From the IMG/VR virus record IMGVR_UViG_3300008110_000030, positions 1 through 64,000 of that record: a stretch of 64,000 nt of DNA, one strand, 5' to 3'. Below, one piece after another: positions 1 to 42,857 of the stretch. Every line of letters begins with the position of its first letter. Position 1 is the first letter of the stretch. A program made the translations under genes and the position numbers. The notes beneath the pieces are model-generated. The model was not told the DNA's origin. It made no database searches and saw only the letters and a list, made by a program, of their open reading frames with translations.

Positions 1-40
1 GTTTAGCAAACTGCTGCCTTAACCACTCGGCCAACCTTCC
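1..40 (-). tRNA. tRNA-Ser(GCT), truncated at window edge
   Basis: Reverse complement GGAAGGTTGGCCGAGTGGTTAAGGCAGCAGT-TTGCTAA-AC: D-arm plus anticodon loop GCT. Confidence 0.85.
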
Positions 41-206
41 ATTAGTTGATAGTACTCACCGTCTATGACAACGTGTCTATTTAGGAGTCCTGCGCTAACA
101 GTTCCAAAGCATCTAACAACAGTTATATCAGACTTCGCGCCATGCCAGCGGATGTCGTGTAGTATATGCGTCCATATACGATACCTGTCAAGTGCTATCA
201 ACTAAT
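41..206 (-). ncRNA. Candidate structured RNA closed by a 16-bp stem, filling the spacer between tRNA-Leu and tRNA-Ser
   Basis: 41-56 attagttgatagtact and 191-206 agtgctatcaactaat are inverted repeats (15/16); internal hairpin GTATATG-GACG-CATATAC. Confidence 0.5.
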
Positions 207-289
207 GGTGCCCCAACCGAGACTTGAACTCGGACGCACTAGGCACTGGCTTCTAAGACCAGCGTGTCTACCAATTCCACCATCGGGGC
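206..289 (-). tRNA. tRNA-Leu(TAG)
   Basis: Cloverleaf, CTGGT-CTTAGAA-GCCAG, long variable arm, encoded CCA. Confidence 0.95.
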
Positions 290-305
290 AAAAATTTATT
301 AACAG

Positions 306-317
306 TTTTAAAGAACA
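306..317 (-). promoter_or_regulatory. boxA-like antitermination site
   Basis: TGTTCTTTAAAA on minus strand, ~25 nt downstream of a sigma70 -10 box; identical copy at 1901-1912. Confidence 0.6.
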
Positions 318-341
318 ATCGTTAATTGCTTAACGTGCTAT

Positions 342-370
342 ATTATAGCAAGAGTATTTAACTGTGTCAA
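342..370 (-). promoter_or_regulatory. sigma70 promoter
   Basis: TTGACA-17 nt-TATAAT on minus strand. Confidence 0.85.
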
Positions 371-629: not shown

Positions 630-704
630 TGGCGGTCTCAACGAGAATCGAACTCGTCCCTACGGCGTGACAGGCCATTATACTAACCGATATACTATGA
701 GACC
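630..704 (-). tRNA. tRNA-Asp(GTC)
   Basis: Cloverleaf, ATGGC-CTGTCAC-GCCGT, GCCA end. Confidence 0.95.
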
Positions 705-779
705 ATTCTGAAACACACTACGACAAATGCTATGCACCCTAACTCTATTTGTCTAGGCTGTGGCAATGTGTTTTAGAAT
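705..779 (-). repeat. ACAC/GTGT-stem element, copy 1
   Basis: Arms ATTCTAAAACACAT / GTGTGTTTCAGAAT; related arms at 3471, 4836 and 4884. Confidence 0.6.
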
Positions 780-780
780 A

Positions 781-1665
781 GTGCTAACGCTGAGATTACA
801 CGTTAGCCATAAGCACCTCTAGCATTATAGTTCGCCTTGCGAGCAAACCTTCTCTAGACATCCACTAGGGTCCTTGCGGATCTCCTAGTCTGCTTACAGC
901 ATCGCCGTTTTTAAAGCCAGGCAGTAGGCTTGTCGTCATGTGCTATTCTGCGGATTCCATTCCGTTGACCTTGCGAGCCATTCAAGTGCGCTAACACCTT
1001 ACGAACCCCCCTCCACAAATTAGTGTCACCTTGCGAGCTTCACTAAACTCAATTAGCTTTCGCCTTGAGTATTAGATACTTTTCACACATGACCGAGGCA
1101 GTCTTTGCTTTTTAATGATAGTTGGATTTGAACCAACTGCCGTCTGTTTAACATACAGATGCTCTACCAAATGAGCTATATCGAACCTACCGCGATGAGC
1201 TGCCTCTGTTGCTCCGTAAACTTTTGATCTACGGAATACAACTCACCACATACCTTTTGCCTCGCGAGCTACTCAGTGATGTTTTGCGATCAATGTAGCA
1301 ACGTTTCACAACGTGCCCCACCAACCACTTACATTGCATACGAGCTCTTAGGAGCGACCCTTCGAACCAATACACTACCCTTTCTCATACCAGCTGACTG
1401 ATTGGTTTCGCATGGAAGTCAGCACCACCTGTTACTTTTCATTGCCCCGTGTTCCTTGCGGCACGTCGAACAATGTTCTTTCCCATACATCAGCTTTGCT
1501 GTTACAACCACCGGTCTTATCAGTGATCGCTTCCTCACGGAAGTGAGCAGGCTTGTTTACATGAACCATTGCTGGCGCTAGTATGTAGGCATTCTAGCTT
1601 TGGGTGTATCGCTACACTTATTCTTTGTAAACGGCAAGCCGCCTACAGGACAATAAACTGCCCTT
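781..1665 (-). ncRNA. Giant structured ncRNA (~885 nt), GOLLD-like
   Basis: No ORF >=60 aa on either strand; many GCAA/GAAA tetraloop hairpins (CTCGCAAGG, CCGCAAGG, GGCGAAAGC); embedded tRNA-like domain; 3' hairpin GCTAACG...CGTTAGC; located in a phage tRNA array. Family name is an inference. Confidence 0.7.
1117..1183 (-). tRNA. tRNA-Asn(GTT)-like domain embedded in the giant ncRNA
   Basis: D-arm GCTC-ATTTGGTA-GAGC, anticodon arm TCTGT-ATGTTAA-ACAGA, T-arm GTTGG-TTCAAAT-CCAAC; no CCA. Confidence 0.7.
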
Positions 1666-1886
1666 AATTTATCATATAAAAGTACAACTGGGTATCAGCT
1701 TATGTTGCAAGACCGTCTCTTGCTATTTCCGCTTCTACATTACAGTCCAGTAAACTCCACCGTGCCATACTTGGGTCCCCCCTCAGCTTTCGTGTACGTT
1801 AACCCGAGCTAGTCCGTCGACTAGTTGTACTCTGTTAACGCTACCTAGTGGTACTGGTAACCTTTTGTACTTTTATATGACAAATT
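1666..1886 (-). ncRNA. Candidate ~180 nt RNA enclosed by a 22-bp stalk
   Basis: 1865-1886 pairs with 1666-1687 over 22 bp (one G-U on the minus strand); internal hairpins CTAGTC-GACG-GACTAG and GCAAGA-GACGG-TCTTGC. Confidence 0.6.
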
Positions 1887-1900
1887 GTCATATACCAACT

Positions 1901-1912
1901 TTTTAAAGAACA
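1901..1912 (-). promoter_or_regulatory. boxA-like antitermination site
   Basis: TGTTCTTTAAAA just downstream of the 1938-1966 promoter. Confidence 0.6.
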
Positions 1913-1937
1913 TTTACTATTTGCTTAGTAAGTATCT

Positions 1938-1966
1938 ATTGTAGCAACAATTTGCGACGTTGTCAA
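1938..1966 (-). promoter_or_regulatory. sigma70 promoter for the ncRNA block
   Basis: TTGACA-17 nt-TACAAT. Confidence 0.8.
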
Positions 1967-3121: not shown

Positions 3122-3129
3122 AATAACAT

Positions 3130-3224
3130 TGGCGGAAAGCAGAGGAGTCGAACCCCACCCGGCTCGTCACCAGGACCCAGTTTTCAAGGCTGGTCGGGGA
3201 ACCAACTCCCCTGCATTACTTTCC
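3130..3224 (-). tRNA. tRNA-Ser(TGA), atypical 8/4-type fold
   Basis: CCAGC-CTTGAAA-ACTGG; acceptor GGAAAGTA/TGCTTTCC; 4-bp T-stem; extended D-stem; long variable arm. Confidence 0.85.
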
Positions 3225-3230
3225 ATTATT

Positions 3231-3394: not shown

Positions 3395-3469
3395 TGGTGG
3401 TAATGAGTGGACTTGAACCACTAACAGTCTCCGTATGAAGGAGGTGGACTACCATTGTCCTACATTACC
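3395..3469 (-). tRNA. tRNA with CAT anticodon (elongator Met or Ile2)
   Basis: CTCC-TTCATAC-GGAG; lacks the initiator GGG/CCC pairs; ACCA end. Confidence 0.85.
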
Positions 3470-3470
3470 A

Positions 3471-3555
3471 TATGGAAGCACACTCATCACTTTTCGCAAC
3501 GGTGGTGTGAAGTCCTTACAACCTAAACTATGTTTAGGCAAAGTGTGCTTTCATA
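3471..3555 (-). repeat. ACAC/GTGT-stem element, copy 2
   Basis: Arms TATGAAAGCACACT / AGTGTGCTTCCATA; fills the Lys-Met spacer. Confidence 0.6.
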
Positions 3556-3630
3556 TGGTAGGGGCACAGAGAATCGAACTCTGATTAATAGGTTAAAAGC
3601 CTACTACTTTAGCCGTTAAGTTATACCCCC
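3556..3630 (-). tRNA. tRNA-Lys(TTT)
   Basis: GTAGG-CTTTTAA-CCTAT, CCA. Confidence 0.93.
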
Positions 3631-5674: not shown

Positions 5675-6268
5675 CTAGTCGTCTAACAACAAATTGAAGT
5701 CAACTGGGATCGCTAGACGAAATCTGTCATAGTAAGGGGTTACCCAATGATACAGAAAGCAAGGAAAAACTAGTAGGTCACCTGAGTTTGGTTGGTACTC
5801 AATAGACCTAAACATTGGTTGAATTTCTTGTGGATAGCCTCTATTGGCATTCACTCTAGGGTCATCAAAAACTATTGCCCCACCGTCTGCTTGATTGTCT
5901 GCTAATAGATAAAATACTGCTGATATGTGTGATCCAGAATGATTGTGTGTATTCATGTAGTATCCCTTTGAATATCCGGCAATCCAGCCACGAATACTAC
6001 TACCAGGATAATCTTTAATATCTAGTTTAAAAACTTCTTTTAAATATCTTGAAAATGCTGGAATCACCACGTCGTCTTTAAATTTTTGGATAATTTTGGA
6101 ATCAGTATCAAAAATGTTTTCTTGTCGAATATCACTAGGTGGATTTTCTAAATCATACATTGAAAATAACTCATTAATAACATTGCCCAATAATTCTTGA
6201 TCTTTGATTGTATCTTTAATTACAGTCGTAGGCCAAAGAGAATTAATTCCTTCATTTATCAAGATCAA
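5675..6268 (-). CDS. 2OG-Fe(II) oxygenase (TIGR02466-like)
   Basis: HNHSGSHISAVFYL...DPR...HWVTPY...R. Confidence 0.8.
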   Translation of the reverse strand: MILINEGINSLWPTTVIKDTIKDQELLGNVINELFSMYDLENPPSDIRQENIFDTDSKIIQKFKDDVVIPAFSRYLKEVFKLDIKDYPGSSIRGWIAGYSKGYYMNTHNHSGSHISAVFYLLADNQADGGAIVFDDPRVNANRGYPQEIQPMFRSIEYQPNSGDLLVFPCFLYHWVTPYYDRFRLAIPVDFNLLLDD

Positions 6269-31938: not shown

Positions 31939-32478
31939 ATGGCAAAACACTTAATGGTAGATTTAGAAACAATGGCGACAGGTCCCAACTCTGTCATTCT
32001 TACAATCGGCGCGGTTAAGTTTGATCCTTGGGGTCCAAATGTAGACCGTAGCACACACAATATCTTTTATCGAAGAGTTGACACAGAGACTTGTGAAAAC
32101 TTAGGCATGGTCATTGATCCCGCCACATTAGACTGGTGGGGTAAACAAGCACCAGAAATTATTGAAGAAGCATTTCATCCAGACGACCGTATTTCTATTG
32201 AACAAACGATTGAGGAGTTCCATAAGTTTGCATGGAACTGTGAAGCATTTTGGAGTCATGGTGCTATTTTTGATATTGTAATTTTAGAAGAGTACTATCG
32301 AAGACTTAAAAAGGCTCTGCCATGGAACTTTTGGCAGATCCGTGATACACGCACAATTTTTGATTTAGGCTATGATCCTGAAATGCCTAAGGACGCTAAA
32401 CACAATGCATTGGAAGACGCATATCGTCAAGCAGTAGGCGTACAAAATATGTATAAAAAGGTTGCTAGACAAAAATGA
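31939..32478 (+). CDS. DEDDh 3'-5' exonuclease (Rv2179c-like)
   Basis: MVDLET, FDIVIL, RDTRT, HNALEDA. Confidence 0.85.
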   Translation: MAKHLMVDLETMATGPNSVILTIGAVKFDPWGPNVDRSTHNIFYRRVDTETCENLGMVIDPATLDWWGKQAPEIIEEAFHPDDRISIEQTIEEFHKFAWNCEAFWSHGAIFDIVILEEYYRRLKKALPWNFWQIRDTRTIFDLGYDPEMPKDAKHNALEDAYRQAVGVQNMYKKVARQK

Positions 32479-42311: not shown

Positions 42312-42857
42312 ATGAGTTTACGAGAAATTACTAAAGATTTACATCACGAAGCAGAAATAACAAAATTTGCCAAGTTATTGCTAAGTGGAAAAATTGAAAA
42401 ATCTGATTATAAGAATTATCTATATAATCTAATGGCAGTATACGATCCAATCGAGTGGTACTGCAAACGTCAAGGTTTCCTTGACACAATGCCTACACTG
42501 CCAAGACTACATGCTATCCATGCAGACTTTGTAGAATTAGATGATGGCACATATTGTTATCTAACGCCAGCGGCTTTAGAATATCAAGCATACTTACATA
42601 AACTAGGCAATGATCCAGAACGTAAACATTTGGTTAAGGCGCATTTATATTGCCGCCATATGGGCGACCTATTCGGTGGTCAAATCATTAAGAAACAAGT
42701 AGCACACATTTCAAGTGGTAAATTTTACGACTTTGAAAATGCTGATGCTATGAAGATGTCTATTCGAGAAACACTCACAGATGATCTAGGAGATGAAGCT
42801 CGTGTGGCATTTGAATTTGCTATTAAGATGATGCGTGACTTATATGCAGGAGAGTAA
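42312..42857 (+). CDS. hemO: Heme oxygenase
   Basis: LRE.T...H..AE (axial His); AHLYCRHMGDLFGGQII. Confidence 0.9.
   Translation: MSLREITKDLHHEAEITKFAKLLLSGKIEKSDYKNYLYNLMAVYDPIEWYCKRQGFLDTMPTLPRLHAIHADFVELDDGTYCYLTPAALEYQAYLHKLGNDPERKHLVKAHLYCRHMGDLFGGQIIKKQVAHISSGKFYDFENADAMKMSIRETLTDDLGDEARVAFEFAIKMMRDLYAGE

What the first reader, a model, noticed from the sequence alone, without database searches (positions are those of the whole stretch)
1666..1894. 22-bp processing-type stalk around a separate ~180 nt RNA, with a competing hairpin
Seen: 1865-1886 pairs with 1666-1687 over 22 bp; the single DNA mismatch is G-U on the transcribed minus strand. A local hairpin (1874-1894, TATATGACA/TGTCATATA) competes for the 5' arm. 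It lies between boxA and the giant RNA. Inference: like the RNase III stalks of rRNA precursors, it excises an undescribed RNA co-transcribed with the GOLLD-like RNA, possibly a partner subunit.
Basis: partly seen in the sequence, partly recalled or inferred. Interest (0 to 1): 0.65.

Follow-up and report, generated by a model that had tools for sequence, protein, structure and literature searches.

The report
New stalk-closed phage RNA beside GOLLD
The 22-bp stalk is real and conserved, and it closes a previously undescribed ~220-nt structured RNA found in the tRNA gene clusters of large, probably cyanobacterial, phages; the RNA often sits just ahead of the giant GOLLD RNA but is neither part of it nor dependent on it.

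Summary
On the minus strand, 1865-1886 pairs with 1666-1687 over 22 bp with one G-U, and a 9-bp hairpin (1874-1894) overlaps the 5' arm.

The stalk is the closing helix (P1) of a conserved structured RNA. I found 15 distinct homologues in viral and metagenome contigs, none in Rfam 15, none in 50,697 sequenced phages, and no true match to two sequence patterns in GTDB genomes. Of 64 predicted pairs, 35 show compensatory changes and 97.9% of cells pair. The arms differ in sequence between lineages, yet P1 stays 17-29 bp and A/U-rich.

The element is not GOLLD's 5' domain. GOLLD homology in about 25 relatives starts at about 1664, and most relatives have their own promoter there instead.

The element is the first or second gene behind a sigma-70-like promoter and a boxA-like leader. 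It follows either the overlapping hairpin (as here) or a tRNA whose CCA forms the first P1 pairs.

It lies within 125 nt of GOLLD in 8 of 13 loci. One complete 31-tRNA island has it with no GOLLD in 20.8 kb, so an obligate partner role is unlikely.

Excision through P1, by RNase III or by flanking tRNA-processing enzymes, is inferred and untested. The RNA's function is unknown.

The parts
1938..1966 (-). Sigma-70-like promoter (TTGACA, 17 nt, TACAAT, TG-extended), the likely start of the RNA operon
   Evidence: 11 of 12 matches. The same promoter position is seen in homologues L129, L172, L169, L167 and L166.
1914..1931 (-). Small leader hairpin just before boxA, in the position of boxB in rrn leaders
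   Evidence: Read. Equivalent hairpins precede boxA in the homologous leaders. The boxB label is inference.
1899..1912 (-). boxA-like element UGUUCUUUAAAAAG
   Evidence: L129 has UGCUCUUUAAAAAG at the same place. A boxA-like motif is present in all 16 leaders I read. Its match to the E. coli rrn boxA is judged from memory of that consensus.
1874..1894 (-). Local 9-bp hairpin whose 3' strand is part of the P1 5' arm; mutually exclusive with the outer half of P1
   Evidence: hairpin alone -7.2 kcal/mol, and forcing it costs 8.5 kcal/mol against the full stalk. Homologous leaders keep such a hairpin with other sequences: GAUAUAG/CUAUAUC, and UAUAGUG/CACUAUA with a covarying inner stem.
1865..1886 (-). 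P1 5' arm
1688..1864 (-). Conserved core of the new RNA: helices P2-P5, two GNRA-type loops, two hairpin loops carrying GACGG, and the invariant stretches ACACGAAAG, CACGGUGGAG and GUAAUG
   Evidence: Alignment A3, RNAalifold, pair counts, covariance model R1. No ORF of 50 aa or more overlaps it.
1666..1687 (-). P1 3' arm; it ends 2-3 nt before the first GOLLD hairpin
1250..1664 (-). GOLLD 5' domain, not covered by the Rfam model
   Evidence: nhmmer homology to about 30 GOLLD loci. In 24 of them the match begins at query position 2, which is window 1664. The division of GOLLD into a 5' and a 3' domain is described in PMC12286853.
787..1249 (-). GOLLD 3' domain (RF02032, 213.5 bits) with tRNA-Asn (1113-1185) embedded in its linker
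702..782 (-). Second P1-like stalk hairpin, between the GOLLD 3' end and tRNA-Asp; its last GG are the first two bases of the tRNA
   Evidence: (I3, 24 nt, 79%). Similar stalk hairpins follow GOLLD in L143, L145, L126, L177 and L150.

Best explanation
Window 1666-1886 (minus strand) encodes an independent, previously undescribed structured small RNA of about 220 nt. It belongs to a family found in the tRNA/GOLLD gene islands of large phages. This window carries cyanophage-type genes. Here it is the first gene of a polycistronic RNA operon: promoter, small hairpin, boxA, the element, GOLLD with its embedded tRNA-Asn, then tRNA-Asp and tRNA-Glu. Its two ends are clamped by P1, an A/U-rich helix of about 22 bp, around a core of four helices with invariant loops. 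SHOWN: the family exists; all its helices including P1 covary; pairing is strand-specific; it is separable from GOLLD; it always lies first or second behind a boxA-like leader. INFERRED: P1 defines the unit that is cut out of the precursor and protects its ends from exonucleases. Where a tRNA flanks it (7 homologues), 3'-end processing after the upstream tRNA's CCA frees the 5' end; where a tRNA also follows (4 of these), RNase P frees the 3' end as well. In this window neither flank is a tRNA, so a double-strand-specific cut in P1 (RNase III, as in rRNA precursor stalks) is the simplest way to free both the element and the GOLLD 5' end. The upstream hairpin forms first during transcription. 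It holds the A/U-rich 5' arm until the 3' arm is made 180 nt later, and is then displaced because the full stalk is 4-12 kcal/mol more stable. What the mature RNA does is unknown.
For: Stalk in the window. Homologues: nhmmer and pattern scans found 13 distinct close members and 2 divergent ones. Structure: 64 pairs, 35 with changes on both sides, 97.9% of cells paired, against 2-8 such pairs when partners are slid and 0 of 500 shuffles reaching the observed values. P1 is 17-29 pairs, 67-83% A+U, with 0-4 G-U pairs in 15 members although the arm sequences differ. Strand specificity: R1 scores 155-266 bits on the sense strand and 18-31 bits on the antisense strand. Not GOLLD; the closest GOLLD relatives have a consensus promoter where the 3' arm lies here. 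Operon context. Flush CCA...UGG stalks between tRNAs. Hairpin conservation and energies. No known family. Absent from sequenced phages; no true match to the two patterns tried in GTDB genomes.
Against: There are no expression or end-mapping data, so excision, RNase III involvement and even co-transcription are inferences. A weak promoter-like site (9 of 12) lies inside the 3' part of the element (1698->1671). Flush stalks are a minority feature (8 of 133 inter-tRNA spacers), so they are not needed for tRNA processing in general. In seven homologues RNase III is not required, which weakens the case for it here. The element could stay attached to GOLLD as a 5' extension. Hairpin covariation rests on only three lineages.
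Confidence: 0.55

Rival explanations
1. P1 is never cleaved. It is the terminal helix of a stable RNA, comparable to the closing stems of Y RNA or 6S RNA. The RNA is released only by enzymes acting on its neighbours, or in this window it is not released at all and remains a covalent 5' extension of GOLLD.
For: In L162, L174, L175 and L173 the helix runs from the CCA of tRNA-Leu to the first GG of the next tRNA with no spare bases, so RNase P plus 3'-end processing would yield an RNA with paired ends. Unstructured spacers are the rule elsewhere. In the window only 2-3 nt separate P1 from the first GOLLD hairpin.
Against: In the window, L129, L172, L169, L167, L166 and L163 the downstream neighbour is GOLLD or another non-tRNA RNA, so no tRNA-type cut is available there. 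GOLLD relatives with their own promoter start about 10 nt before the first hairpin, which suggests a short 5' end is the normal state.
Confidence: 0.27
2. The element is a functional partner, accessory domain or cargo of the GOLLD nanocage.
For: 8 of 13 members found through the element lie within 125 nt upstream of GOLLD, in at least three different arrangements. The core has two GNRA-type loops and two identical GACGG loops, the kind of elements that make RNA-RNA contacts. GOLLD assembly relies on kissing loops and A-minor contacts (PMC12286853).
Against: L180 has the element in a complete 31-tRNA island with no GOLLD in 20.8 kb. Five members are followed by tRNAs or an ORF. Only 1 of 34 GOLLD loci found through GOLLD has it adjacent. 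GOLLD assembles alone in vitro. A duplex search gave nothing interpretable.
Confidence: 0.1
3. The repeat works at the DNA level, as terminal inverted repeats of a miniature mobile element or as operator half-sites for a regulator just downstream of the promoter.
For: It is a perfect 9-3-9 palindrome next to a promoter, with a third copy of the half-site 200 bp away. P1-like arms with similar sequence close different cargos, which could reflect cassette exchange.
Against: The arm sequence occurs nowhere else in 2.9 million viral contigs or in the window. Homologues keep the pairing with different sequences and with G-U pairs that would be A.C on the other strand. The interior helices covary as well.
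Confidence: 0.03
4. The element is a cis-regulatory leader (riboswitch or attenuator) in which the hairpin/stalk alternative controls read-through into GOLLD.
For: There are two mutually exclusive conserved structures at the 5' end of an operon.
Against: No terminator-like site follows on that strand. In seven members the hairpin is replaced by a tRNA and the element sits between tRNAs. Neither conformer contains an expression platform.
Confidence: 0.05

Closest known systems
Processing stalks of bacterial rRNA precursors (16S and 23S), behind a boxA antitermination leader and cut by RNase III
   Same: A long-range helix of about two turns is formed by the sequences flanking a stable RNA. It lies just downstream of a boxA-like leader in a polycistronic RNA operon that also carries tRNAs. 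Pairing is kept by compensatory change rather than by sequence.
   Different: It encloses about 180 nt rather than 1.5-2.9 kb. It is phage-encoded. In half the members the helix is flush with tRNA ends (CCA...UGG). Cleavage by RNase III is untested. A conserved hairpin overlaps the 5' arm.
Phage T4 RNA C and RNA D (species 1 and 2), small stable RNAs in the tRNA gene cluster
   Same: Small non-tRNA RNAs of unknown function transcribed from a phage tRNA region (PMC3014915). From memory, not checked here: T4 species 1 RNA is cleaved by RNase III in vitro.
   Different: BLAST searches of the phage collection found no similarity. I assume but did not check that the collection includes T4. The new RNA is larger, has a 22-bp closing helix and comes from uncultured phages.
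GOLLD RNA (RF02032), variable 5' domain
   Same: Same transcription unit, directly adjacent, and found in the same phage tRNA islands.
   Different: It lies outside the Rfam model and outside the 5'-domain homology shared by about 30 relatives. It is absent from most GOLLD loci and present without GOLLD in L180.
Y RNA / YrlA-type RNAs
   Same: The 5' and 3' ends form a long stem closing a structured module, and such RNAs are sometimes found near tRNA genes. This description is from memory.
   Different: The YrlA model gave only a 15.9-bit hit (E = 5.4), on the tRNA embedded in GOLLD and not on the element. No tRNA-like T-arm is visible in the core.

Membership tests
GOLLD RNA (RF02032) | Covered by the Rfam covariance model | tested here: not met
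   The model matches 787-1249 only. Nothing matched in 1666-1894 even at E up to 10.
GOLLD RNA (RF02032) | Homologous to the 5' domain shared by related GOLLD RNAs | tested here: not met
   The 5'-domain homology starts at window 1664 in 24 loci. The stalk element matched only one of 153 loci in that search, and the closest relatives have a promoter there.
rRNA-type RNase III processing stalk | Long-range helix of about 20 bp or more formed by the flanks of a stable RNA | tested here: met
   22 bp here and 17-29 pairs in 15 members.
rRNA-type RNase III processing stalk | Pairing conserved by compensatory substitutions | tested here: met
   In the outer P1 helix, 6 of 17 pairs have changes on both sides and 97.7% of cells are paired.
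rRNA-type RNase III processing stalk | boxA antitermination leader upstream | tested here: inconclusive
   A boxA-like motif is conserved in all 16 leaders read. NusB/NusE binding and antitermination are not testable with these tools.
rRNA-type RNase III processing stalk | Cleaved by RNase III | not testable with these tools
   Needs an in vitro cleavage assay or end mapping.
Any Rfam 15 family | Match to a curated covariance model | tested here: not met
   No hit on the element in the window, L129, L162, L163 or L176.
MITE or other element with terminal inverted repeats | Multiple dispersed copies with the same termini | tested here: not met
   The arms occur once in the window and only in this contig among viral contigs. 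The G-U pairs are strand-specific.
T4 RNA C / RNA D | Sequence homology | tested here: not met
   blastn in distant mode against 50,697 phage records gave no match to the element. I assume but did not check that the collection holds T4.

The most novel reading that the evidence does not exclude
The element is a trans-acting RNA that works with the phage's other giant or small RNAs. Its two GNRA loops and twin GACGG loops might dock onto the GOLLD cage as cargo or as an assembly or opening factor. Alternatively its 22-bp dsRNA handle might act as a decoy for a host defence or RNA-processing protein. On this reading the P1-type stalks define a family of exchangeable RNA cassettes in phage tRNA islands.
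Probability: 0.12. Interest if true: 0.85.

Novelty: new variant of a known kind. Interest (0 to 1): 0.62.

Why it matters
GOLLD is one of the largest bacterial or phage non-coding RNAs. It forms a 14-mer nanocage and has no known function. This work defines a new, well-supported structured RNA class that is often transcribed directly ahead of it. Together with an rrn-like boxA leader and conserved end-clamping stalks, this gives concrete handles for experiments: how GOLLD's 5' end is made, whether phages copy the rRNA maturation logic for their own RNA operons, and what the other small stalk-closed RNAs in these islands do. The family's alignment and model (A3, R1) could be submitted to Rfam.

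Tried and rejected
1. GOLLD 5' domain: rejected.
2. Mobile element or operator repeat: rejected.
3. Known RNA family: no Rfam match at E up to 10.
4. Sequenced phages: blastn in distant mode found only chance 30-nt hits.
5. Cellular genomes: two pattern scans of GTDB representatives gave 0 hits and 1 chance hit.
6. Intermolecular complementarity with GOLLD: RNAduplex on whole molecules gave only meaningless extended duplexes. The short loop motifs are invariant, so covariation cannot test contacts.
7. Flush stalks as general punctuation of the tRNA array: rejected. Only 8 of 133 spacers in the clade have one, against 0 of 53 elsewhere.
8. Phage-encoded RNase III: not among the 25 of 45 matched Pfam families that were listed, for 60 ORFs from this window (64 kb of a 214.6-kb contig), so this is not informative.
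9. Close relatives of the phage: a megablast of 24 kb of the window and the neighbouring 2OG-Fe(II) oxygenase found only the contig itself.

Full report
OBSERVATION. The window is bases 1-64000 of a 214.6-kb viral contig. On the minus strand, 1865-1886 and 1666-1687 form 22 consecutive pairs with one G-U (A1671 opposite C1881 on the + strand). The complementarity extends to 33 nt at 85%. The arm pattern occurs nowhere else in the window even with 3 mismatches (0.04 expected). Only one other inverted repeat of at least 18 nt within 1.5 kb exists in 64 kb. The stalk is in the MFE and centroid folds of 241 nt (z = -5.55) and of 1151 nt. The hairpin at 1874-1894 is a perfect 9-3-9 palindrome that shares nine bases with the 5' arm.

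CONTEXT. Rfam places GOLLD at 787-1249(-) at 213.5 bits, with tRNA-Asn embedded in its linker. That model covers only the conserved 3' domain. Published GOLLD has a 5' domain of about 420 nt and a 3' domain, with the linker sometimes holding a tRNA (PMC12286853). I fetched GOLLD loci by pattern scans. The window's 1250-1665 is homologous to the 5' domain of about 30 of them. In 24 the match begins at query position 2, which is window 1664. GOLLD proper is therefore about 787-1664. That is 878 nt including the 73-nt tRNA, a normal size. The stalk element abuts it but lies outside it. In the nearest relatives, such as L007, a consensus promoter occupies the place of the 3' arm.

Upstream of the element the window has a TTGACA-17-TACAAT promoter (1966->1938), a small hairpin (1914-1931) and UGUUCUUUAAAAAG (1899-1912). 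No terminator-like site follows on that strand before the next strong promoter at 370->342.

A CONSERVED RNA FAMILY. nhmmer with the element found one homologue among the first 153 loci, L129. Scans with conserved internal motifs found more. In total there are 13 distinct close members and two divergent ones: L140, and L145 which equals L142.

The 13-sequence alignment A3 gives a consensus of 64 pairs. It has a P1 stalk, P2, a long P3 arm, a short P4 hairpin and P5. Of these pairs, 35 have compensatory changes and 97.9% of cells are paired. Sliding the partners by 1-3 columns leaves 2-8 such pairs, and 0 of 500 shuffles reach the observed values.

The covariance model R1 scores members at 155-266 bits and the divergent ones at 40-55 bits. 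The antisense strand scores only 18-31 bits, and 95 unrelated loci give nothing. P1 has different sequences in different lineages but stays at 17-29 pairs, 67-83% A+U, with 0-4 G-U pairs. The G-U pairs and the strand asymmetry show that selection acts on the RNA, not on a DNA repeat. The core has the invariant stretches ACACGAAAG, CACGGUGGAG and GUAAUG, two GNRA-type loops and two hairpin loops carrying GACGG.

No Rfam 15 family matches the element. No sequenced phage matches it. Two sequence-pattern scans of GTDB representative genomes gave no true match.

TWO GENOMIC SETTINGS.
- Type A (window, L129, L172, L169, L167, L166, and divergent L140 and L145): promoter, small hairpin, boxA-like motif, a local hairpin overlapping the P1 5' arm, then the element.
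- Type B (L177, L175, L173, L163, L162, L174, L176): promoter, hairpin, boxA-like motif, one tRNA (Leu-UAG, or Gln in L176), then the element. P1 begins with the tRNA's CCA and ends in UGG.

In L162, L174 and L175 the final GG of P1 are the first bases of tRNA-Tyr, and in L173 of tRNA-Val, so the element exactly fills the space between two tRNAs. The element is always the first or second gene behind a boxA-like leader. L129 has UGCUCUUUAAAAAG, which by my memory of the consensus is one base from the E. coli rrn boxA.

THE OVERLAPPING HAIRPIN. Type A leaders keep a hairpin whose 3' strand is the start of the P1 5' arm, using three different sequences:
- UAUAUGACA/UGUCAUAUA in the window;
- GAUAUAG/CUAUAUC in five loci;
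- UAUAGUG/CACUAUA in L140 and L145, where an inner stem also covaries.

The hairpin alone is worth -4.8 to -15.7 kcal/mol. Forcing it costs 4-12 kcal/mol relative to the full stalk. It is therefore best read as a kinetic placeholder that forms first and is displaced once the 3' arm is transcribed. This is inference. It fits what is known of rrn antitermination complexes, which promote long-range helix formation in rRNA precursors (from memory).

RELATION TO GOLLD. Among the 13 members found through the element itself, 8 lie within 125 nt upstream of GOLLD. Six of these are directly adjacent. L129 and L177 have an extra stem-closed RNA of about 110 nt in between. The other five are followed by tRNAs or an ORF.

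Among the 34 loci found through a GOLLD 5'-domain pattern, only L129 has the element adjacent. L180 is a 20.8-kb stretch of a 374-kb contig that holds a whole island of 31 tRNAs. It has the element but no GOLLD. The linkage is therefore frequent but not obligatory. A dedicated partner-subunit role is unlikely, though not excluded.

OTHER STALKS. The window has further P1-like stalks:
- 702-782, between the GOLLD 3' end and tRNA-Asp;
- 3466-3560, between tRNA-Lys and tRNA-Met;
- 39-208, between tRNA-Leu-UAG and a truncated tRNA-Ser, enclosing 134 nt, with a weak homologue (E = 5e-5) upstream of GOLLD in L125.

R1 also picks up short P1-only or P1+P5 hairpins in related loci, several of them right after GOLLD. 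A survey shows these flush stalks are a minority feature: 8 of 133 inter-tRNA spacers in this phage group and 0 of 53 in other loci. They are a property of particular RNA cassettes, not general punctuation.

MECHANISM.
- Shown: a conserved, independently folding RNA whose ends are clamped by P1, inside a boxA-led RNA operon.
- Inferred: P1 marks the unit for excision and shields its ends. With tRNA neighbours, 3'-end processing after the upstream tRNA's CCA, plus RNase P where a tRNA follows, would suffice.
- Inferred for this window: the neighbours are a leader and GOLLD, so a double-strand-specific cut in P1 (RNase III) would free the element and create the GOLLD 5' end in one step.

My estimates are as follows.

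| Claim | Estimate |
|---|---|
| Real RNA family | about 0.97 |
| Separate from GOLLD | about 0.85 |
| Excised from the precursor | about 0.6 |
| Excised by RNase III | about 0.4 |

HOST AND NOVELTY. The window encodes heme oxygenase (42312-42857), a ferredoxin-dependent bilin reductase, Hsp70, Hsp20 and several 2OG-Fe(II) oxygenases. This set is typical of cyanophages. It also encodes an Rv2179c-like 3'-5' exoribonuclease at 31939-32478.

The closest known analogues are the rRNA processing stalks and the T4 RNAs C and D, which are small RNAs of unknown role in the T4 tRNA region (PMC3014915). I found no description of this RNA in Rfam or in the literature searches. I rate it a new variant of a known kind: a new RNA family with an rRNA-like maturation layout in a phage.

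Noticed in passing
window 39-208 (-): A second stalk-closed RNA. An 18-bp helix (94%) runs from the CCA of tRNA-Leu(UAG) to the first GG of a truncated tRNA-Ser and encloses 134 nt. A weak full-length homologue (E = 5e-5) lies in L125 258-422, behind the same promoter-boxA-tRNA-Leu leader and upstream of GOLLD.
   Followed up: partly
window 702-782 (-); L143 3444-3539, L145 6195-6305, L126 2228-2339, L177 903-1008, L150 643-757: A P1-like A/U-rich stalk hairpin directly after the GOLLD 3' end. In the window it is flush with tRNA-Asp. Model R1 detects the others at 25-33 bits.
   Followed up: partly
window 3466-3560 (-): A 19-nt, 95% complementary stalk running from the 3' end of tRNA-Lys into the 5' end of tRNA-Met, enclosing 57 nt.
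   Followed up: partly
window 312-370 (-) and 1899-1966 (-); leaders of L125, L129, L140, L145, L162, L163, L166, L167, L169, L172-L177: rrn-like leaders ahead of phage tRNA/ncRNA operons: a near-consensus sigma-70 promoter, a small hairpin, then a boxA-like motif (GUUCUUUAA or GCUCUUUAA type).
   Followed up: partly
L129 1294-1415 (-) and L177 1879-1999 (-): A conserved RNA of about 110 nt between the element and GOLLD. Its closing stem covaries: GGUCUACC/GGUAGUCC against GUUCUGCC/GGCAGAAC.
   Followed up: no
L145 5187-5270 (+): A deletion-like mini version of the family, with P1 and P5 only, placed after tRNA-Lys and followed by a consensus promoter and GOLLD.
   Followed up: partly
L163 3700-3900 (+) and L162 690-900 (-): A conserved, structured-looking non-coding stretch upstream of the promoter-boxA-tRNA-Leu-element unit. 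No Rfam match at gathering threshold.
   Followed up: no
L045 about 5790-5960 (+): An element of about 170 nt with its own consensus promoter, closed by AAAACGUU/AACGUUUU, just upstream of the GOLLD promoter. It is unrelated in sequence to the family studied here.
   Followed up: no
window 31939-32478 (+): A phage-encoded Rv2179c-like 3'-5' exoribonuclease (Pfam PF16473, E = 5e-38). It may be relevant to 3'-end trimming of the phage's many RNAs.
   Followed up: partly
window 42312-42857 (+) and other ORFs of alignment A4: Heme oxygenase, ferredoxin-dependent bilin reductase, Hsp70, Hsp20, TerC, CsgG/CsgF-like proteins and several 2OG-Fe(II) oxygenases. This is a cyanophage-type auxiliary gene set.
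   Followed up: partly
window 3122-3230 (-): By eye this spacer looks like a long-variable-arm tRNA (Ser-UGA-like acceptor and T arm). Neither ARAGORN nor Rfam called it.
   Followed up: no
L137 3660-4043 (+); L045 2835-2913 and 6491-6565; L145 2096-2188: ARAGORN calls a tmRNA inside a phage tRNA island (L137), and CUA-anticodon (amber suppressor) tRNAs in L045 and L145. One of these, in L045, appears to lie in the GOLLD linker.
   Followed up: no
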